Shown piece after piece: positions 741-64,000 of a stretch of DNA of 64,000 nucleotides (position 1 is the first letter of the stretch; each line of letters begins with the position of its first letter). The stretch lies in the IMG/VR virus record IMGVR_UViG_3300025162_000016, positions 1 through 64,000 of that record. The stretch is one strand, 5' to 3'. A model generated the notes under the pieces. It ran no database searches, was not told where the DNA came from, and was given only the letters and a program-made list of their open reading frames with translations. Both the position numbers and the translations under genes were made by a program.

Positions 741-2459
741 ATGACAGAAAAACAATCACTCCCATCAAGCGTTTATAATTGGAAGAGACAAAAGCCAGAT
801 TCTCGTGATTATAAATTTGCAGAAATACCTTCGGTGAAACGATTAAAAGTAACAACTCCACCACCGGTTGTTAATTTACGAAAATGGTGTTCTGAAGTAG
901 AAAATCAAAAATCTTTAGGTAGTTGTTTTACCGGCGATACTTTAATTCCTCTTTTGAATGGAAAGATAGCTACACTGAAAGAACTTACAGATGGGATGTA
1001 TGGGAAAACTTTTTGGGTATATGGAAATAAAAATGGAAGAATGGTTCCTGCGTTAGCATCCGCATCTCTTACACAGTATATCGCACCCATTTATAATGTC
1101 ACATTAGATAATGGGAGAACAATAAAATGTACTGCTGATCATCAGTTTTTGATGCGAGATGGTAATTACAAAAAAGCAATGGAATTAGTATCTGGGGATA
1201 GTTTAATGTCATTTAGAAGAAAATATAATAAATTGGGATATGAGTATGTTTTTTGCCACAGTGACCACAAATATCATCTTACACATTGGTTAGTCGGAAG
1301 TTATATACATGATTATTCTGTTAATAAAAATGGAGTAGAAGTGATACATCATAAGGATTTTATTAAAAATAATAATACTCCGGAAAATTTGGTAGGAATG
1401 ACAATACAAGAACATTCAATATATCAAAATAAAACGGCGGAATGTAAATTAAAACGTTTTATCGCAGCGAAAAATAGATGGAAAGATATAACGCCGGAAG
1501 CTATGAGTCGTGTTGTAGATTCCGCAGAAATACGTTTGGGGGCAGTGGGAACACGAAGTCAGATAGCAAAAACAGCAAACGAGGTATTTCTTAAATGTGG
1601 AAATATTTCTAAAGAACAATGGGAAACGACGGACGTAACAAAACGATTTAAGTTTGAAACGGCGATGAAATATTTTGGAAACCAAGACGAGTTATTGATT
1701 GCTGCACAAAATTATAATCATAAAGTCGTATCGGTCATTAATAGTAATACATCCGAAGATGTTTATTGTCTCACGGTACCAGATACTCAAAATTTTGCAC
1801 TTAATGATGGAGTTTATGTTCATAATTGTACCGGCCAGGCGTGGGTGGGTTTAATGGAGTGGCATGAGAATTTCATGGGAAGAGGAGGAAAGGCATTTCA
1901 AAATCTTAGTCGGTTGTTTGTTTATTATAATGAACGGGAACTTGAAGGAACCATCAATGAGGATGCCGGTGCCGAATTAAGAAGTGGAGCAAAAGCATTG
2001 GCTACGTGGGGGGTTTGTTATGAAAAAAGTTGGCCTTATAACATTGATACTTTCACACAAAAACCAAGTCCAATATGTTATCAGGATGGAGCTATTCATA
2101 AAATTAATAGTTATTATTCTATCAGTACATTTAATCATCTTAAAATGTGTTTGGCAAACAATTTGCCGGTGGTATTTGGATTTATGGTATATTCGAGTTT
2201 TGATTCCGATGTGGTTGCTAAAACCGGTATAGCTTCTATGCCAGATATTAAAAACGAGGAATTGCTGGGGGGACACGCCGCAATGATTGTGGGATATAAT
2301 AATTATGAGAAGCGATTTTTAGTAAGAAATTCGTGGGGGAAAAATTGGGGACTTAAAGGAATTAATGCCGGTTATTTTACGCTTCCCTACGATTATGTGG
2401 CTAATCCCAATCTTGCCAGTGATTTTTGGACGGTGGTTCGTATTGTCGAAGACGCATGA
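741..2459 (+). CDS. Papain-family (C1A) cysteine peptidase interrupted by an intein
   Basis: QKSLGS|CTGQAW after intein removal; GGHA (His) and VRNSWG (Asn) motifs. Confidence 0.9.
   Translation: MTEKQSLPSSVYNWKRQKPDSRDYKFAEIPSVKRLKVTTPPPVVNLRKWCSEVENQKSLGSCFTGDTLIPLLNGKIATLKELTDGMYGKTFWVYGNKNGRMVPALASASLTQYIAPIYNVTLDNGRTIKCTADHQFLMRDGNYKKAMELVSGDSLMSFRRKYNKLGYEYVFCHSDHKYHLTHWLVGSYIHDYSVNKNGVEVIHHKDFIKNNNTPENLVGMTIQEHSIYQNKTAECKLKRFIAAKNRWKDITPEAMSRVVDSAEIRLGAVGTRSQIAKTANEVFLKCGNISKEQWETTDVTKRFKFETAMKYFGNQDELLIAAQNYNHKVVSVINSNTSEDVYCLTVPDTQNFALNDGVYVHNCTGQAWVGLMEWHENFMGRGGKAFQNLSRLFVYYNERELEGTINEDAGAELRSGAKALATWGVCYEKSWPYNIDTFTQKPSPICYQDGAIHKINSYYSISTFNHLKMCLANNLPVVFGFMVYSSFDSDVVAKTGIASMPDIKNEELLGGHAAMIVGYNNYEKRFLVRNSWGKNWGLKGINAGYFTLPYDYVANPNLASDFWTVVRIVEDA
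924..1826 (+). mobile_element. Cis intein (301 aa) with HNH endonuclease
   Basis: Starts CFTGDT; block B CTADHQF; HNH motif VIHHKDFIKNNNTPENL; ends VYVHN followed by C. Confidence 0.9.
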
Positions 2460-56908: not shown

Positions 56909-59650
56909 ATGAGTTTGTTATCATCATTTGGGAAGCAAGGCGAGACGCTCGGGTTGCTTACCCTTAAAGCGGACATCGAAGATACAGCACAGCTATCTAA
57001 ATATTTCGCATTGACGGAGTTTGACCCTGTTTTTACCGCAGGGAAAAACTCCGTTGCTTTTAATGGATCTAATCTGTTAAAGGATAAATCCGAGGTTAAA
57101 GTCGAATGTATAGATTCTCATGGCAATTCCTTATATATGGAAAATGCCAGAGCAATCAATTCACAGTTCACGGATGCGTCCAAATTTGTTTTAGCGGTTC
57201 ATATCTATGAGGAAGTTTATAATGGACCAGGAAAATTAATCCTTGTAGGAACTACCGTTCGAGGAGAAATCGTCAGATGGATAGGAAACATCACTATAGA
57301 TAAAACCCTCGATAATAGTTCTAAAGTCAGATTTTATTATAAACCCACACTGGAAATCCGTCCTTTATTATATCCACTTATAGATACAGGAGTGGCTCAA
57401 ACAATTTATCCTCCCCTTCCGGCCACAAGAGGCGCAACTGCAATTGCAACTATAACAGGCAAAATCGAGCATATAGAAATTACTATCGGAGGAAGGGACT
57501 ATACATATGCGCAGGTTGGACTTAAGCGTGGTCCATTCTATACACAGTGGGTCAGTGCAGATGTGGTGGTAGATATACATGGAAGTATTATATCCCTTGT
57601 TATAACCGGACAGATGCCACCATGGGAAGGTGTGGTGGAAAGAATAGAAATAAAAGGAGATGGATATGGTGCATTTGGAACTCCAGTCAAGTTAAATCAA
57701 GTTGCGTCTATTATTTTGCAAGATGGCGGAATAGGATATACGTATAACCCTGTAGTTACAATTACCGGAGTTGCTGGAACTGGAGCAACAGCAACCGCAA
57801 CTGTATTTAACAGCGTCGTAACTTCTGTTGAACTCACAAATTCAGGGTCTGGATATACCGCCATTCCTACTGTTAATTTTGAGGTTCCTCCTTATGTTCC
57901 CCCGGCGATATTAAATGTTCCAGTATCTTTTACTGGAAGTTTTTATACGTATGCAACTAATCCGCTTAGAGATGCGGATAAGTTCACACTTAATGCTAAA
58001 CAAACGGAGGTTGATTATCGTCTAATATTATCTGGATCAACCGATGATTTTAAATTAGATTCGCCGACATTTCCTTCTAATTCATTTAATAGTCAAATGG
58101 AAGGACAGACTATTAATTTAAATATAAGTGAAATTTTACTTCCCTTTTCTTATCAAACAGTATCCTCAAGTATAACCCAATCTTTTACAATTAAAAAAGT
58201 AAAGGACAATAAAACCATTCAATTATCGGAACCCTTTTATTATGCGGATGGAAAAAATGAATTTGTTGCTCATATTACTAAAGGAACATTCAATTGTTTA
58301 TATGACTATGTTTTATATAACACAAACCCAGATTCTGTAAAAAAAATAAAAACATCTCCAACTGAAACAGTAAATGTTGAAGAATCTCACGCCGAAATTA
58401 CGTATAGAAATCTCCGAACTTATTCGGGATTTGTAGCTCGACATAAATTATATCGAAAAAGCGCATTTGCTCCGGGCGATTTTCAATTAATTTCAGATGA
58501 ATTATTAGGATCATTAGAGTTATTACAAGACACGGTGACTTTTAATAAATTTTATGATAGAATGGGAGTATTTTATAATCAACTTCATGTTGACAAATAT
58601 TGGTTTACCAGTTCAAACGCTATAAGTGTTCAAGCACAATCTTCTCCTCTTAATTCAATGAAGATTTCGGGAAGTACTCCAACCACGTTTGATGGTCATC
58701 AATATGTTATCATAAAAAATGATTCTACCGGTGGTATTAATGATAATATATATTATCCTTACAACGAAATAGAATTTAATCGACAATCGGGATCATCCTA
58801 CAATGCTAATTTTGTACCTCTTAAGAAAGACGCACTATATGCACTTTCTTTTAATGTGACAATGGAAAAAGAGGCATTGGATACAACTGCCAATGTTGCA
58901 TTCTATTTTACTAGTTCCATTCCCAGTATAAAGTTAGAAAAATCATATGAATCCCCACACGGATTGAAATTAGGAGCGGTATCTACAACAGATAAAACTG
59001 CCATAAAATATTTTACGGATAAACAAGTATTATATTTTACTCCAACTAATGATTATTATGGAACTTTAGTAGTAATACCATATCATTGCAATGTTATATT
59101 ATCGGATATTTCTTTAAAATTGTATGGAGATCATGGGTTTTCTCCGGATATTCTTTTTATTAGAATACCGTTTCCGTTAAAAGTCGCAAATGAAGCATTT
59201 AACTTGAAAGCGGAGTTATTAGATATTAATTCTAATGTGGTTTTTTCTAACATTACATCAACCCAAACGTTTGATACAATTGGCGCTAGTTTGAATGGGG
59301 CTGGAGTTAGTAATTTAAACGCCGTCATTTCAGTTGTACCAACGGACGGCACAACGCCCCCCACGGTTGTAGTTACAGGAACCCCATATCTCCCAGATTT
59401 AGCCGCTGCTACGGATCTTATTAGATTTGTTGGATGGCACATTCCAACCGATGTAGGAGAAAAAGGAAAACTGTGCTATACCAATGTATCTCAATTATTT
59501 ATTGATTCAGACGAATATATTGTATTAAATTCGTATGAAAGTGGAATAGAACATATTGCGAAATCCGTGGCAGTTAGATATGACTTTTCTGTCGGCCAAG
59601 GTCGCAAAATCGTGGTTAATACTCTTGGAGTTAAAGAATCGTTCCCGTAA
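56909..59650 (+). CDS. Structural/tail-associated protein with Gly-rich repeats
   Basis: GGIGYTYNP.V.I and GSGYT..PTV.F repeats. Confidence 0.55.
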   Translation: MSLLSSFGKQGETLGLLTLKADIEDTAQLSKYFALTEFDPVFTAGKNSVAFNGSNLLKDKSEVKVECIDSHGNSLYMENARAINSQFTDASKFVLAVHIYEEVYNGPGKLILVGTTVRGEIVRWIGNITIDKTLDNSSKVRFYYKPTLEIRPLLYPLIDTGVAQTIYPPLPATRGATAIATITGKIEHIEITIGGRDYTYAQVGLKRGPFYTQWVSADVVVDIHGSIISLVITGQMPPWEGVVERIEIKGDGYGAFGTPVKLNQVASIILQDGGIGYTYNPVVTITGVAGTGATATATVFNSVVTSVELTNSGSGYTAIPTVNFEVPPYVPPAILNVPVSFTGSFYTYATNPLRDADKFTLNAKQTEVDYRLILSGSTDDFKLDSPTFPSNSFNSQMEGQTINLNISEILLPFSYQTVSSSITQSFTIKKVKDNKTIQLSEPFYYADGKNEFVAHITKGTFNCLYDYVLYNTNPDSVKKIKTSPTETVNVEESHAEITYRNLRTYSGFVARHKLYRKSAFAPGDFQLISDELLGSLELLQDTVTFNKFYDRMGVFYNQLHVDKYWFTSSNAISVQAQSSPLNSMKISGSTPTTFDGHQYVIIKNDSTGGINDNIYYPYNEIEFNRQSGSSYNANFVPLKKDALYALSFNVTMEKEALDTTANVAFYFTSSIPSIKLEKSYESPHGLKLGAVSTTDKTAIKYFTDKQVLYFTPTNDYYGTLVVIPYHCNVILSDISLKLYGDHGFSPDILFIRIPFPLKVANEAFNLKAELLDINSNVVFSNITSTQTFDTIGASLNGAGVSNLNAVISVVPTDGTTPPTVVVTGTPYLPDLAAATDLIRFVGWHIPTDVGEKGKLCYTNVSQLFIDSDEYIVLNSYESGIEHIAKSVAVRYDFSVGQGRKIVVNTLGVKESFP

Positions 59651-59711
59651 ATATTTATAGAAAAATATAGAAAAATATACTTTTTGAATAAGAATGTTCA
59701 TATATACTAAT

Positions 59712-59876
59712 ATGAAACTATCTCATTGGGCAAAAACTCAAGGCATTACTTACCGGACCGCATGGAATTGGTTTAAAGCAGGGAAAATGCCGGTGAAGAC
59801 TATTCAAACTAAAACCGGAACAATATTGGTTGAAATCTCATCTCCAATTAATTGTATAAAAAAGTCAAAGCCATGA
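59712..59876 (+). pseudogene. tnpA: IS607 TnpA HTH-only derivative (54 aa)
   Basis: MKLSHWAKTQGITYRTAWNWFK closely matches the N-terminus of 11080; TATAGAAAAA repeats upstream (59656-59679). Confidence 0.75.
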
Positions 59877-59921
59877 AATCTGAGTTTTGATGATGTAAAA
59901 TAAGCATATTAAAAAGTAATT

Positions 59922-60569
59922 ATGTATAAGAATAAATCGAATATTTCCATAGTAAAATCTTATTTGGCAGGGGAACGTCCATTTGTGAAGGTAGGATATT
60001 CCGTACCCGAAATTAAACGAGAAATCGGTTCTACCTGGGTTGATAATCAGGATGTAAAATGGGAACAAAAAGATGGATATAAAACCCGAATCAATGAACA
60101 AGCTAATATGATTAAAGCGGCAATGAAACGAAAATGCAAATGTGGACAGGAAATTCAATATGGAAGTAGATTGGATGAAGTATTCTTTTCTAAAACAGGT
60201 AAATGCTTTGATTGTATTATTAAAGAAGAAACCGAATACCGAGTTTTAGGAGTCTATCCTCAATACGAAGCTTTCAAACTTCTATCGAATTATTTAGGAT
60301 TTTTAGAAGATATGAAACAGAAAATTGAAGATAGTATAAAATATTTTCAAACAGAAGATGGAACTTTGCAAATCTTATGTAATAGTGAAGGATTTTTGGA
60401 AAAATTCAAAGGAATAAATACCGAAGAATTATTGGTTTCTGCTAAAAATGATTTGTCCGAAATTACAAAGTTAATTTCAAAAACGTCCAAAGATAAAAAG
60501 AAAGCCAAAAAGACATTTAATGAGGATTTAAAAAAGACCCGAAAGAATTTAACTTCTAGCATAAAATGA
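59922..60569 (+). CDS. Hypothetical protein with Zn-binding CxC..CxxC
   Basis: CKCG..KCFDC. Confidence 0.65.
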   Translation: MYKNKSNISIVKSYLAGERPFVKVGYSVPEIKREIGSTWVDNQDVKWEQKDGYKTRINEQANMIKAAMKRKCKCGQEIQYGSRLDEVFFSKTGKCFDCIIKEETEYRVLGVYPQYEAFKLLSNYLGFLEDMKQKIEDSIKYFQTEDGTLQILCNSEGFLEKFKGINTEELLVSAKNDLSEITKLISKTSKDKKKAKKTFNEDLKKTRKNLTSSIK

Positions 60570-61159
60570 GCGATAATACAGTAAAAAGATCTCTTCAAGA
60601 GATCATTAAAGAAGAATATAAAAAATGCTTAATAGATCCGGTATATTTCATGCGGAAATATGTCAAAATTCAGCATCCTATTCGTGGAACTATAGCGTTC
60701 GATCTTTATCCGTTTCAAGCATCTACGCTGAAAGATTTTGCCGATAATGATTTCAGCATCGTATTGAAATCTCGCCAAATGGGAATATCCACACTAGTAG
60801 CGGCATATTCTCTGTGGCTTATGATTTTTCATAAAGATAAAAATGTACTTATCATTTCTATTAAACAAGACGTATCTAAAGAAATTGTATCAAAAATTCG
60901 ATTTGCAAATGATAATCTTCCGTCTTGGATGAGGGTAGAATGCAAAGAAGATAATCGACTATCACTTAAATTAGCCAATGGATCACAAGTATCAGCGGTC
61001 TCATCTGCTACAACCGCAGGGAGATCCGCAGCACTTAGTCTTTTAGTTTTAGATGAATGTTGCGAAAAATCTACAGTGGTGTATATTCGAAACAAGAAAA
61101 CCGGCGAAACAAAACCGGTAAAAATTGGTGAATTATATGAATCAAATATATACGTGTAA
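60566..61159 (+). CDS. terL: Terminase large subunit N-fragment plus split-intein IntN (33 aa, 61058-61156)
   Basis: LYPFQ, KSRQMGIST, GRS, Walker B LLVLDE then CCEKSTVV..IGELY. Confidence 0.9.
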   Translation: MSDNTVKRSLQEIIKEEYKKCLIDPVYFMRKYVKIQHPIRGTIAFDLYPFQASTLKDFADNDFSIVLKSRQMGISTLVAAYSLWLMIFHKDKNVLIISIKQDVSKEIVSKIRFANDNLPSWMRVECKEDNRLSLKLANGSQVSAVSSATTAGRSAALSLLVLDECCEKSTVVYIRNKKTGETKPVKIGELYESNIYV

Positions 61160-62573
61160 ACTGGATAATAAAGAATGCAAATCGCAGTCAGAATTTGTGG
61201 TTCATTTGAAAAAATGTCATGGATTTAATACGAAAAGTTATTATGATTCGGTGATTAAACCCGGATTAAATGGGAAATGTTTAAATTGTACAAAAGATAC
61301 GATTTTTTTAGGATTGCGGGAGGGATATCAAAAATTTTGTTCTAATAAATGCCGCAGTGAATATTTTAAAAATCACAAGGAGTTGCAAGAGTTACGAACA
61401 CAAAAAATAAAAAAAACTAAGTTAGAAAAATATGGAGACGAAAATTATAATAATGTAGATAAAATGCAGAAAACATGTTTGAAAAAATATGGGAAAATAA
61501 CAGCTACTGGCACCGAAGAATATAATAAAAAACATCGTGAAACTTGTTTAAAGAGATATGGAGTGGAACATCATGCTCAATCCGACGAAGTAAAAAATAA
61601 GTCTAAACAGACATGTTTAAATCATTATGGAGTGGAATATACGTTACAATCAAAGGAAATAAGAGATAGGATAGATAATACTGTTAATGAAAAATATGGC
61701 GGATATACATTGGCATCGAAGACATTATCGGAGAAAATGAAAAATACAATGATAGAGAAGTATGGCGTGGAAAATGCGCTACAAAGTGATGTCATAAAAG
61801 AAAAGCAACGGGCAACCAATCGGGAGAGATATGGAGCATCTGTGCCAACTCAAAATAAAGATGTTATTTTAAAAATGAAGAAAAGTAACATAAAAAAATA
61901 TGGAATTGAGAATACTTTTAATCTTATACAGACAAAAAACACTTTTCTGGAAAAATATAACGTTATAAACCCATCTCAAATACCGGCAGTTCAAGAAAAA
62001 ATTAAGGAAACGTGTCTGGAGAAATATGGTAGTAATACTTTTTTTGCCTCGGATTATGCAAAGGAAAAAATTAAAAATACATGCATGGAACGATATGGAG
62101 TGTCCTGTGTTTTATTGCTCCCCGAAATAAAAGAAAAATCGAAGCAAACCAACATTTTAAAGTATGGAGTTGCACACCCAATGCAAAATTCAATAATTAG
62201 AAACAAAGTAATGTCGGCTATAAATAGAAAGTCGTATAAATTACAACAATATATGACCATTTTTAACGATAATATTGTATATCAATCTCTTCCGGAACTT
62301 GCATTTATTAAGCTGTGCGAATCGAGGGGACTTCGAATTTTAAATGGACCGGTTTTACCGTATATTTTAGATGAAAAAAACAGAATGTATTATTCAGACT
62401 TTTTAATTTCCGACACGAAAAGTCAGCGAATAGTAGAAATTAAAAGAAAGCATGAATGGTGGTTTTCCGGATTAAAATCGGGAGAAATTAAAGCAAAAAC
62501 GAAATGCGCAATAAAATTCAGTAAAGAAAATGGATATTTGCCGTATAAAATCATTTTCGAAAATAAGATATGA
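61137..62573 (+). CDS. Free-standing endonuclease (KTCLEKYG repeats plus PD-(D/E)XK domain) between the intein halves
   Basis: Many xTCLxKYG repeats; YQS..E, Y.SDF, IVEIK. Confidence 0.75.
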   Translation: MNQIYTCKLDNKECKSQSEFVVHLKKCHGFNTKSYYDSVIKPGLNGKCLNCTKDTIFLGLREGYQKFCSNKCRSEYFKNHKELQELRTQKIKKTKLEKYGDENYNNVDKMQKTCLKKYGKITATGTEEYNKKHRETCLKRYGVEHHAQSDEVKNKSKQTCLNHYGVEYTLQSKEIRDRIDNTVNEKYGGYTLASKTLSEKMKNTMIEKYGVENALQSDVIKEKQRATNRERYGASVPTQNKDVILKMKKSNIKKYGIENTFNLIQTKNTFLEKYNVINPSQIPAVQEKIKETCLEKYGSNTFFASDYAKEKIKNTCMERYGVSCVLLLPEIKEKSKQTNILKYGVAHPMQNSIIRNKVMSAINRKSYKLQQYMTIFNDNIVYQSLPELAFIKLCESRGLRILNGPVLPYILDEKNRMYYSDFLISDTKSQRIVEIKRKHEWWFSGLKSGEIKAKTKCAIKFSKENGYLPYKIIFENKI

Positions 62574-64000
62574 GCAATTTTAAAAAAATATCGGATTGGG
62601 AAGTATTAACTCCAAATGGGTGGAGCGAGTTTAAAGGGGTTCAGGTTCGTCAAAAAGATTGTTATATTAAAATGGTATTTGATGATGGAACAATTTTAGA
62701 ATGTTCGGAAAATCATAAAATTAAATTATTAAATGGTAAATTTGAATATGTTAAAAACATTGAACTTGGCACTTCGATTTTAGCATTAAATGGAAATAAA
62801 ATTTTAGTATCTAAAGAGAAGATTGATGGGGAAATTGATTTATATGATTTGATAGAAGTGAAGAAAAACCGGGAATTTTATTCCAACGATATTTTATCAA
62901 GTAATTGTGCATTTATTGAAAAGGCGGAAGAGATTTGGGCGGCAGCCCAGCCCACACTATCTTGTTTAGATAAAAATACACTTATTTTATCCGACATGGG
63001 TTTAATTCGTTTGGAAACTTTTATTAATAGCTCAACTAAACTGGAATTTAATCCTGTAAATATAAAAACACATGATGGCGATAATATGGTTGATGTTTCT
63101 TCTTTTTATAAATCCGAAAAATCGGATTTATATGAAGTGGAATTTGAAAGTGGTGGCAAGATTGTTGGAACCGAGAATCATCCATTAATGACAAAAAGCG
63201 GGTGGAAAACTATTGGGGATTTAAACGAAAATGAGGATGCTGTTTTATGTAAATATTCTCAAAATGTTTTTGGTTCATCTATAGATTATACTAAATTCAA
63301 TCCCAATATTAGGAAGGATGCTATTGTTTATAAATTCTCCAATGAAGAAATTGCTTATTTGTGCGGGATTTGGACCGCTGAAGGTCACATTTGTAAAAAA
63401 ACAGTTGGGATTACTAACACAGATAAAGAAATAACCGATTGGTTAAAAGAAAAAGGATTTAAATGTTATGATGATAGACATTATTATTTAAGTTCGGGTT
63501 GGGTGGTTAATCTTTTAAAATGGATAGGATGTGAAGGAACGGCTCATACAAAACGAATTCCGGAACGAATTCTTGCGGCATCCCAAGAAGAACAAATTGC
63601 GTTTCTTCAAGGATTGTTTGATGGAGATGGTTGTTCATTAGGTTCCAAAGGAATTAAACTTACATCGGGTTCATATGAACTGCTTTCTAATGTGAGAGTT
63701 GTTCTATTGAATATGGGAATAAATTCTTATATACGAAATGCAGTATGGAAATCAACAAAATCCACGGTTATTAAAGATAAAACTAGAATTTTCAGTGGGT
63801 ATGAATTACATATTGGAGGTTTTGACGCCCATTCATTTTATTCTACAATTGGGTTTAGAATTAAAAGAAAACAACTTGGCTGGCAAAAGTTATCAAGAAA
63901 ATCTATTAAACGGATTTTTCCAGATAAGACAATCGTTAAAAACTTAATTCTTGAAAGTGGGATGTCGGTTAGAAAATTTTCAAAAAAACACAAGTGTTAT
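62570..64000 (+). CDS. terL: Split-intein IntC (112 aa) plus 19-aa TerL extein plus second LAGLIDADG intein; runs off the window
   Basis: Open frame to the window end (absent from the ORF track); VLTPNGW, CSENH, ILSSN|CAFIEKAEEIWAAAQPTLS|CLDKNT; YLCGIWTAEG and FLQGLFDGDG. Confidence 0.9.
   Translation, partial: MSNFKKISDWEVLTPNGWSEFKGVQVRQKDCYIKMVFDDGTILECSENHKIKLLNGKFEYVKNIELGTSILALNGNKILVSKEKIDGEIDLYDLIEVKKNREFYSNDILSSNCAFIEKAEEIWAAAQPTLSCLDKNTLILSDMGLIRLETFINSSTKLEFNPVNIKTHDGDNMVDVSSFYKSEKSDLYEVEFESGGKIVGTENHPLMTKSGWKTIGDLNENEDAVLCKYSQNVFGSSIDYTKFNPNIRKDAIVYKFSNEEIAYLCGIWTAEGHICKKTVGITNTDKEITDWLKEKGFKCYDDRHYYLSSGWVVNLLKWIGCEGTAHTKRIPERILAASQEEQIAFLQGLFDGDGCSLGSKGIKLTSGSYELLSNVRVVLLNMGINSYIRNAVWKSTKSTVIKDKTRIFSGYELHIGGFDAHSFYSTIGFRIKRKQLGWQKLSRKSIKRIFPDKTIVKNLILESGMSVRKFSKKHKCY

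What the first reader, a model, noticed from the sequence alone, without database searches (positions are those of the whole stretch)
60566..62962. Fractured terminase gene with an atypically split intein (33-aa IntN, 112-aa IntC) around a free-standing endonuclease
Seen: TerL stops 33 aa after Walker B (LDE|CCEKST..ELYESNIYV*). A separate nuclease ORF overlaps both halves, then a new ATG (62570) gives IntC ending SSN|CAFIE, restoring DE-CAFI. The penultimate residue is Ser, not His. Established: short-IntN split TerL inteins (AceL-TerL, GOS-TerL class) are rare and valued for protein trans-splicing. Packaging here would depend on trans-splicing of two polypeptides.
Basis: partly seen in the sequence, partly recalled or inferred. 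Interest (0 to 1): 0.75.

Follow-up and report, generated by a model that had tools for sequence, protein, structure and literature searches.

The report
Naturally split intein in phage terminase
The only DNA-packaging (large terminase) gene of a 369-kb lake phage is cut in two by a homing-endonuclease gene that sits inside an intein, so the enzyme almost certainly has to be joined from two proteins by trans-splicing; this is real, but it is a new member of an already described family.

Summary
TerL-N (60566-61159) ends 33 residues after Walker B (LVLDE|C). A 478-aa endonuclease ORF (61137-62573) overlaps both halves. TerL-C starts at 62570 with a 112-aa IntC ending SSN|CAFIE.

IntC matches CatC, the consensus atypical TerL intein (PDB 6DSL, E 3e-12), and an IntN family profile has CatN as its best PDB hit. 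A predicted IntN-IntC complex scores 0.77 against 0.02 for the best control. Removing this intein and two further inteins in silico gives a 543-aa TerL that aligns without gaps to an uninterrupted relative. The genome is complete, has no second TerL, and the locus is identical in assemblies from 2017 and 2020. No intron signature was found.

This is not rare in nature. Of the 120 best TerL-N homologues, 85 stop 30-34 residues after DE. Dassa et al. 2009 already described a fractured terminase with this break point. A penultimate Ser occurs in 22 of 142 relatives.

Modestly new points are the endonuclease type (12 DUF7487 repeats plus a TnsA-like PD-(D/E)xK domain), its turnover in relatives, and one trans plus two cis splicing events in one TerL.

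Verdict: new member of a known kind. Trans-splicing itself is inferred, not shown.

The parts
59922..60569 (+). 215-aa ORF directly upstream, whose stop overlaps the TerL-N start (ATGA). It is conserved at this position in relatives and may be the small terminase.
   Evidence: No Pfam or PHROG family hit, so the function is inferred from position only.
60566..61057 (+). TerL N-extein, 164 aa, ending in Walker B LVLDE (D-E at 61052-61057).
   Evidence: Pfam Terminase_6N 6.4e-6. It is 79% identical, without gaps, to the uninterrupted TerL of L006.
61058..61159 (+). IntN: 33 residues starting with Cys1 (block A only), followed by the TAA stop at 61157-61159.
   Evidence: Of the 120 best homologues, 85 end 30-34 residues after DE with the same motif. 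The family profile has 6DSL_A CatN as its top PDB hit, E 0.0061.
61137..62573 (+). Free-standing homing-endonuclease gene, 478 aa. Its ATG lies inside the Tyr-Glu codons of IntN, and its TGA overlaps the IntC ATG.
   Evidence: Pfam DUF7487 2.3e-58. PHROG 3339 and 12131, both annotated 'homing endonuclease'. Orthologues at the same place with the same overlaps in L088, L089 and L090.
61401..62201 (+). Twelve tandem repeats of about 23 aa (the DUF7487 array) in the endonuclease. This is the presumed DNA-binding module. It is preceded by a Cys/His-rich segment at 61155-61376.
   Evidence: The model gives one long and one short helix per repeat. The Atlas shows this module fused to Vsr/DUF559, HNH, TnsA-like and other domains in viruses.
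62232..62570 (+). TnsA-like PD-(D/E)xK nuclease domain of the endonuclease, with D421 (62397-62399), E434 (62436-62438) and K436 (62442-62444).
   Evidence: D, E and K are invariant in alignments A2 and A5. AF2 model pLDDT 92. The Foldseek top hit is TnsA 1t0f_B, E 8e-4, TMq 0.72, followed by R2 RLE, Bax1 and Hjc.
62570..62905 (+). IntC: 112 residues with block B (CSENH, 62702-62716), block F (62837-62860) and block G ending S-S-N (62885-62905).
   Evidence: PDB 6DSL_B CatC 3e-12 and gp41-1 6.5e-6. 780 relatives. Block coordinates.
62906..62962 (+). First C-extein segment, from Cys+1 (CAFIEKAEEIWAAAQPTLS).
62963..64000 (+). Start of a second, contiguous LAGLIDADG intein (428 aa, reaching genome position 64246 beyond the window). 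A third intein lies at 64274-65650, and the ORF ends at 66706.

Best explanation
The large terminase gene of this T4-like jumbo phage is a 'fractured gene'. An intein inserted right after Walker B (DE|C) is itself cut, between splicing blocks A and B, by a free-standing homing-endonuclease gene. Three overlapping ORFs on one strand are probably translated from one transcript. They are TerL-N carrying a 33-aa IntN, the endonuclease, and a 112-aa IntC fused to TerL-C. IntN docks into the nearly complete HINT domain of IntC. The standard class-1 steps then join the two exteins: Cys1 N-S shift, attack by Cys+1, cyclisation of the terminal Asn, and S-N shift. Two further LAGLIDADG inteins in the C half splice in cis, giving a 543-aa TerL. 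The endonuclease (zinc-finger-like head, 12 DUF7487 repeats, TnsA-like PD-(D/E)xK domain) is a selfish passenger that presumably cuts alleles lacking it. Shown here: the anatomy, the homology, the colinearity of the excised product, and persistence in nature. Inferred: trans-splicing, co-translation and endonuclease activity.
For: The coordinates and overlaps are as described. IntC matches CatC at 3e-12, and the IntN profile has CatN as its top hit. The predicted complex scores 0.77 against a best control of 0.02; that mark was reached by 51 of 78 solved complexes and 2 of 108 mismatched pairs. The interface includes D163-K168, block B and S-S-N. The in-silico product aligns over 536 aa at 79% identity with 0 gaps to the intact TerL of L006. 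There is a single TerL in a CheckV-100% genome with direct terminal repeats. The locus is identical in assemblies of 2017 and 2020. Of the 120 nearest TerL-N proteins, 85 stop 30-34 aa after DE. Of the 145 best IntC relatives, 95 start a protein. Relatives keep the split with an orthologous, a different, a truncated or a deleted endonuclease. dN/dS is about 0.2-0.4 for both intein halves. Members of the family (AceL-TerL, GOS-TerL, Cat) trans-splice in vitro (PMC11766414).
Against: No protein or RNA data exist for this locus, and no RNA run was listed. The penultimate His, an assisting residue, is Ser here. The complex prediction may be recalled from the solved Cat structure. dS is saturated, so the dN/dS values are rough. 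The insertion sites of AceL-TerL and GOS-TerL could not be checked, because the primary papers are not held.
Confidence: 0.85

Rival explanations
1. The two TerL fragments work as a non-covalent heterodimer. The intein halves would serve only as association domains and would not splice.
For: The predicted tight IntN-IntC complex would also fit mere association. The penultimate His is missing. A fragmented phage RNR assembled by domains derived from a mobile element is known (PMC3045599, listed).
Against: Cys1, block B S-x-x-H (as in CatC), block F, the terminal Asn and Cys+1 are all retained. Their retention is consistent with the low dN/dS of both intein halves. An unspliced 145-aa HINT domain would sit between Walker B and the next ATPase strand. 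Characterised family members do splice (PMC11766414).
Confidence: 0.06
2. TerL is a pseudogene in a defective or helper-dependent phage.
For: The gene is interrupted three times. The penultimate Ser and the C-terminal Gln of the third intein are both non-consensus.
Against: The genome is complete with terminal repeats and has no other TerL. The sequence is identical at word depths of about 17 to 48 in samples three years apart. All ORFs are intact and the excised product is colinear with an uninterrupted TerL. The same design is conserved in hundreds of lineages.
Confidence: 0.04
3. The halves are joined at the RNA or translation level, by a group I or II intron carrying the endonuclease ORF, by ribosomal bypassing, or by frameshifting.
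For: Endonuclease ORFs inside phage genes are often intron-borne. The two TerL ORFs happen to be in the same frame.
Against: No intron family matches at E<=10 with permissive filters. There are 46 in-frame stops between the halves. The residues at both edges are homologous to intein parts, not to exon sequence. Relative L003 has only 40 nt between the halves and still carries the same stop and start. No significant RNA structure was found at the junctions.
Confidence: 0.02
4. Assembly chimera or sequencing error.
For: The source is a metagenome assembly.
Against: Three independently assembled contigs from two studies cover the whole stretch with 0 differences and no alternative joints. Orthologous loci exist in NCBI, ENA and JGI records.
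Confidence: 0.01

Closest known systems
Fractured terminase locus of Lake Gatun (Dassa et al. 2009, PMC2677866), later characterised as the GOS-TerL split intein
   Same: A gp17-like terminase from a freshwater metagenome in two ORFs. The split intein is broken at the unusual point, so the N part holds only motif N1 and the C part (122 aa there, 112 here) holds all the others. It was reported among the fractured-gene loci, which are defined by a free-standing endonuclease gene between the halves.
   Different: GOS-TerL has Ser1 and a 37-aa IntN (PMC11766414); this one has Cys1 and 33 aa. The 2009 endonucleases were GIY-YIG or Vsr-like; this one is DUF7487 plus a TnsA-like PD-(D/E)xK domain. 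Identity of the insertion site could not be checked here.
AceL-TerL and the consensus Cat intein (PDB 6DSL)
   Same: Atypical split with a short IntN (25 and 30 aa) and a long IntC (104 aa), with Cys1 and Cys+1. CatC is the best PDB match of this IntC (3e-12), including block B S-x-N-H. CatN is the best match of the IntN family profile.
   Different: IntN here is longer, with an inserted IRNKKTGE-type turn. In the printed alignment, 39 of the 102 aligned query positions are identical to CatC. The penultimate residue here is Ser. Those proteins are tested in vitro; this one is not.
gp41-1, NrdJ-1 and IMPDH-1 fractured-gene split inteins
   Same: The same genomic logic: host gene, IntN, endonuclease gene, IntC. 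gp41-1 is the second PDB hit of IntC (6.5e-6).
   Different: [quoted passage not shown]
I-Bth0305I / EDxHD (Vsr-like) homing endonucleases (PMC3239194)
   Same: N-terminal repeated DNA-binding motifs and a C-terminal restriction-fold nuclease. They are found in fractured genes and introns of phages.
   Different: The catalytic motif here is D...E-x-K and the fold is closest to TnsA; no Vsr or I-Bth0305I structure is among the 50 best matches listed. There are 12 DUF7487 repeats rather than two NUMOD-like motifs.
TnsA of Tn7 (PDB 1t0f, 1f1z)
   Same: Best structural match of the nuclease domain (TMq 0.72), with the same D/E/K active-site type.
   Different: 13-14% identity. TnsA is a transposase subunit without a repeat array.

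Membership tests
Class-1 intein (HINT domain) | Nucleophile Cys/Ser at position 1 directly after the N-extein | tested here: met
   Cys at 61058 directly after LVLDE.
Class-1 intein (HINT domain) | Block B (T/S)-x-x-H | tested here: met
   S-E-N-H at IntC residues 46-49, aligned to S-D-N-H of CatC.
Class-1 intein (HINT domain) | C-terminal Asn followed by Cys/Ser/Thr at +1 | tested here: met
   S-S-N|C at 62897-62908.
Class-1 intein (HINT domain) | Penultimate His (typical assisting residue, not obligatory) | tested here: not met
   Ser here. Ser also occurs in 22 of 142 family representatives, and in 7 of 42 that are split at the Walker-B site. Splicing without this His is documented (PMC4031507, refs 74 and 87).
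Atypically split TerL inteins (GOS-TerL, AceL-TerL, Cat) | The host is the large terminase | tested here: met
   Terminase_6N. 79% identity to an intact TerL. T4-type portal gene next door.
Atypically split TerL inteins (GOS-TerL, AceL-TerL, Cat) | Break between blocks A and B, giving an IntN of about 25-40 aa and an IntC above 100 aa | tested here: met
   33 and 112 aa. Block B lies in IntC.
Atypically split TerL inteins (GOS-TerL, AceL-TerL, Cat) | Sequence homology of both halves to characterised members | tested here: met
   IntC matches CatC at 3e-12. The IntN profile matches CatN at 0.0061 as top hit, although the single IntN sequence gave no hit.
Atypically split TerL inteins (GOS-TerL, AceL-TerL, Cat) | Same insertion site in TerL | not tested
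   The primary papers and the supplement are not held.
Atypically split TerL inteins (GOS-TerL, AceL-TerL, Cat) | Protein trans-splicing activity | not testable with these tools
   Only a predicted complex is available: 0.77 against a best control of 0.02.
Fractured gene arrangement (Dassa et al. 2009) | Host gene in two same-strand ORFs that end and begin with split-intein halves, with a free-standing endonuclease gene in between | tested here: met
Fractured gene arrangement (Dassa et al. 2009) | Regulatory hairpin or late promoter in front of the endonuclease gene (seen in many of the 2009 loci, not in all) | tested here: not met
   There is no spacer, because the ATG lies inside IntN. The fold z-score is -0.39 and the promoter scan is at background.
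EDxHD / Vsr-like homing endonucleases | E-D-x-H-D catalytic signature and a Vsr-like fold | tested here: not met
   The invariant residues are D421, E434 and K436. The Foldseek top hits are TnsA, R2 RLE, Bax1 and Hjc. Other DUF7487 ORFs of this genome do carry the Vsr-like ECNG..WH motif.
PD-(D/E)xK nucleases, TnsA-like | Restriction-endonuclease fold with D...(D/E)-x-K | tested here: met
   pLDDT 92 model. TnsA 1t0f_B at E 8e-4, TMq 0.72. Weak Pfam Tn7_TnsA-like_N hit, 0.0042.
Group I/II intron with endonuclease ORF | Match to an intron covariance model | tested here: not met
   Rfam 15, E-value mode up to 10, positions 59500-64000: no intron family.

The most novel reading that the evidence does not exclude
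The DUF7487-array plus TnsA-like PD-(D/E)xK protein may be an uncharacterised homing-endonuclease lineage dedicated to the block A/B break point of TerL inteins. Its start is buried in the IntN coding sequence and its stop is fused to the IntC start, which would couple TerL-C synthesis to endonuclease translation. The intermixing of split and contiguous relatives (at least 4 state changes forced by well-supported branches) would make this junction a second natural endonuclease entry point in HINT domains, with repeated fracture and re-fusion.
Probability: 0.3. Interest if true: 0.45.

Novelty: new member of a known kind. Interest (0 to 1): 0.3.

Why it matters
Short-IntN split inteins are useful for protein semisynthesis and labelling. 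This locus and its hundreds of relatives offer natural variants: Cys1 or Ser1, penultimate His or Ser, and differing IntN first strands. These could be mined for orthogonal or faster pairs. Biologically, the locus is a complete-genome example in which an essential phage enzyme needs one trans- and two cis-splicing events. The relatives show stages of endonuclease gain, decay and loss while the split itself persists. None of this changes current understanding of inteins.

Tried and rejected
- **Rfam scan**: only sub-threshold noise and no intron, so the RNA-splicing idea was dropped.
- **RNA sequencing runs**: none was listed, so the RNA level could not be examined.
- **Promoter/terminator scan and RNA folding at the three gene junctions**: at background level and uninformative.
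- **PDB sequence searches**: the single IntN sequence gave only chance hits; a family profile was needed. The whole endonuclease gave nothing; structure prediction was needed.
- **IMG/VR scan with TerL-N**: it returned mostly uninterrupted TerL genes, and only 1 of the 80 loci it returned (L007) was split. It gave the intein-free reference but few contexts.
- **dN/dS**: dS is saturated, so the values are rough.
- **Tree of 143 IntC-like segments**: only 9 of 140 branches are well supported, so no claim is made on how many times the split arose beyond 'at least 4 state changes forced'.
- **Literature**: the primary AceL-TerL, GOS-TerL and Cat papers and the Dassa supplement are not held, and no paper mentions DUF7487.
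- **Full-length endonuclease model**: pTM is 0.29, so the global arrangement of the repeats was not interpreted and no fold search was run on it.
Full report
**Observation.**
- ORF 60566..61159 encodes 197 aa. Residues 66-167 match Terminase_6N.
- Walker B LVLDE ends at 61057. It is followed by 33 residues beginning Cys-Cys (61058-61156) and a TAA stop.
- A 478-aa ORF starts at ATG 61137, inside the last 23 nt of that gene, and ends at 62573.
- Its TGA shares the sequence ATGA with the ATG at 62570. That ATG opens a 112-residue segment ending Ser-Ser-Asn (to 62905), followed by Cys-Ala-Phe-Ile-Glu.
- The downstream ORF leaves the window and ends at 66706 (1378 aa).
- In the TerL-N frame there are 46 stop codons between the halves.

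**Source and reliability.**
- The window is the first 64 kb of a single 368,758-bp virus record with 7.1-kb direct terminal repeats, rated 100% complete by CheckV.
- The closest isolates by TerL-N are T4-like phages of Microcystis and Flavobacterium.
- Five freshwater or lake metagenome runs hold the locus.
- Contigs assembled from three of them, from two studies (2017 and 2020), span 5.9 kb across it with 0 differences and no alternative joints.
- tblastn finds no second TerL in the genome.

**Identity of the flanking segments.**
- The 112-aa segment's best PDB match is CatC, the consensus engineered atypical TerL intein (6DSL_B, E 3e-12). The alignment includes block B S-x-N-H and block G. 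The next match is gp41-1.
- The single 33-aa segment is too short to find anything. A profile of 23 family IntN sequences has CatN (6DSL_A) as its top hit (E 0.0061).
- A complex prediction of IntC plus 19 extein residues with TerL-N residues 153-197 scored 0.77, against 0.02 for the best control. That mark was reached by 51 of 78 solved complexes and 2 of 108 mismatched pairs.
- The interface includes D163-K168, block B and the terminal S-S-N. Because Cat is solved, this shows likeness rather than proof of binding.

**The product.** The C half contains two more contiguous LAGLIDADG inteins. One spans 62963-64246 (428 aa...HN|T) and the other 64274-65650 (459 aa...HQ|T). Removing all three inteins in silico gives a 543-aa protein. 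It aligns over 536 residues at 79% identity and with zero gaps to an uninterrupted TerL on IMG/VR contig L006, running straight through ...DE-CAF.EKAEEIW...TLSTGGK.I.LSTPNG.

**The family.**
- A length-restricted search with TerL-N found 459 homologues. Among the best 120, 85 stop 30-34 residues after DE with the motif C..x.T.I.IRNKKTGEIK..I..LY...Y.
- An exhaustive search with IntC found 780 cluster representatives at E<=1e-3. Of the 145 best that reach the C-terminus, 95 carry the segment at the protein's N-terminus (split) and 50 carry it internally (contiguous).
- After excluding the window's own copy and two rows without a terminal Asn or Gln, 42 representatives are split at the C-A-F Walker-B site and 23 are contiguous there.
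- Contiguous versions at the same site exist (P0051 and P0082).
- The penultimate residue is His in 114, Ser in 22 and Lys in 4 of 142 representatives. Among those split at the Walker-B site it is His in 35 and Ser in 7. The Ser is therefore a recurrent variant. The penultimate His is an assisting residue, and inteins that splice without it are documented (PMC4031507, refs 74 and 87).
- Against three relatives, dN/dS is about 0.2-0.4 for both halves, although dS is near saturation.

**What lies between the halves in relatives.**
- Three loci have an orthologous 481-502-aa endonuclease (51-54% identical). These are L088 (an NCBI assembly), L089 and L090. In L088 and L089 the endonuclease ATG lies inside IntN, and in L088 the stop and the IntC start share ATGA as here.
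- L005 keeps only a 124-aa nuclease-domain remnant (54% identical over that domain).
- L002, L004 and L007 carry a different PD-(D/E)xK protein of 335-365 aa.
- L003 encodes the same TerL-N protein as L002. It has lost 1,033 bp and keeps only the last ~85 nt of that endonuclease gene, so the two halves are 40 nt apart.
- The split therefore survives replacement, decay and loss of the endonuclease. A 40-nt spacer also excludes an intron for the family.

**The endonuclease.**
- It matches Pfam DUF7487 at 2.3e-58 and PHROGs annotated as homing endonuclease.
- Its layout is a Cys/His-rich head, then twelve tandem repeats of about 23 residues (consensus ..K.K.TCLEKYGV....QS.E.K), then a 113-residue C-terminal domain.
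- The C-terminal domain has invariant D421, E434 and K436.
- That domain models at pLDDT 92. Its best structural match is TnsA of Tn7 (E 8e-4, TMq 0.72), followed by other PD-(D/E)xK nucleases.
- It is therefore not of the GIY-YIG or Vsr-like (EDxHD) types reported for fractured genes in 2009.
- The Atlas shows DUF7487 as a virus-wide module fused to Vsr/DUF559, HNH, TnsA-like and other domains.
- Cleavage activity and target are inferred, not tested.

**Alternatives.**
- RNA splicing: no intron model matches at E<=10, there is no significant local RNA structure, and the L003 spacer argues against it. No RNA run could be listed, so this is not directly excluded for this locus.
- Pseudogene: unlikely, given a sole TerL, intact frames and persistence over three years.
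- Non-covalent assembly without splicing: cannot be excluded computationally, but all catalytic positions are retained.

**Comparison with what is known.**
- Dassa et al. 2009 (PMC2677866) list a gp17-like terminase from freshwater Lake Gatun among the fractured genes. It is 'fractured at an unusual point', with a 122-residue C part holding every motif except N1.
- The review PMC11766414 gives GOS-TerL as 37/115 aa with Ser1, AceL-TerL as 25/104 aa and Cat as 30/104 aa. All of these are active in trans-splicing.
- The present locus (33/112 aa, Cys1, Cys+1) is a new member of that kind.
- What it adds is the complete-genome context, the endonuclease type, the turnover series, and the need for one trans- plus two cis-splicing events in one enzyme.

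**Limits.** A tree of 143 IntC-like segments is poorly resolved. Insertion site is strongly clustered on it (17 changes against 47 in shuffles). Split versus contiguous state is barely clustered (36 against 40.7), and well-supported branches force at least 4 changes. This hints at repeated fracture or re-fusion but does not prove it.

Noticed in passing
window 62963-64000, continuing to G000:C1:64246; also G000:C1:64274-65650 (L001:4964-7651): The TerL C half holds two further full-length LAGLIDADG inteins, only 9 extein residues apart (TLS|C...HN|TGGKAILLS|C...HQ|TPNG). The third ends in Gln instead of Asn. Three inteins lie within 28 extein residues after Walker B.
   Followed up: partly
L001:8665-11724 (G000:C1:66664-69723): The T4-type portal gene directly downstream carries intein-splicing matches in three stretches (Pfam Portal_T4 and Intein_splicing). 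Portal genes of relatives L002, L005 and L088 are intein-laden too.
   Followed up: partly
G000:C1, ORFs at 72598-74289, 87935-89605, 93148-94977, 101677-103185, 140702-142516, 149154-150656, 151730-152836, 152842-154839 and 218474-219376: Nine more DUF7487-repeat ORFs. At least two carry a Vsr-like E-C-N-G..W-H motif, and six share a conserved C-terminal ..DRIWDCG.. domain. Only the 218-kb copy shares the TnsA-like D...E-x-K domain. The PF14890 scan matched about ten open reading frames in this genome.
   Followed up: partly
window 59694-59876: A 60-aa ORF is 68% identical to the N-terminal helix-turn-helix of a Resolvase-family (IS607-like) recombinase. In relative L088 that recombinase sits at the same position together with a TnpB/Cas12f-like gene. 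The ORF here looks like a decayed remnant of that element.
   Followed up: partly
window 61061-61081 (IntN residues 2-8): A 95%-identical TerL-N from another sample (P0001) differs from the window almost only in IntN residues 2-8 (CEKSTVV against LTYFNTI) and the last residue. This is a tight mosaic patch in the strand that contacts IntC. Possible allele exchange; unexplained.
   Followed up: no
protein P0051 (TARA metagenome): A contiguous intein at the same site. IntN- and IntC-like parts are bridged by a tandem ESNLY-ESKLY-ESKLY repeat, which may be a re-fusion of a formerly split intein.
   Followed up: no
L003:6586-6670 compared with L002:6586-7711: Two contigs encoding identical TerL-N proteins differ by a 1,033-bp deletion that removes the endonuclease gene except its last ~85 nt. 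This is a clear case of endonuclease loss from a split intein.
   Followed up: yes
window 945-1826 and G000:C1:362601-363482: An intein-bearing 576-aa ORF lies inside the 7.1-kb direct terminal repeat and is therefore present twice in the record.
   Followed up: no
window 59922-60569: A 215-aa ORF with a Cys4 motif is conserved immediately upstream of TerL-N in relatives and overlaps it by ATGA. By position it may be the small terminase, but it has no Pfam or PHROG match.
   Followed up: partly
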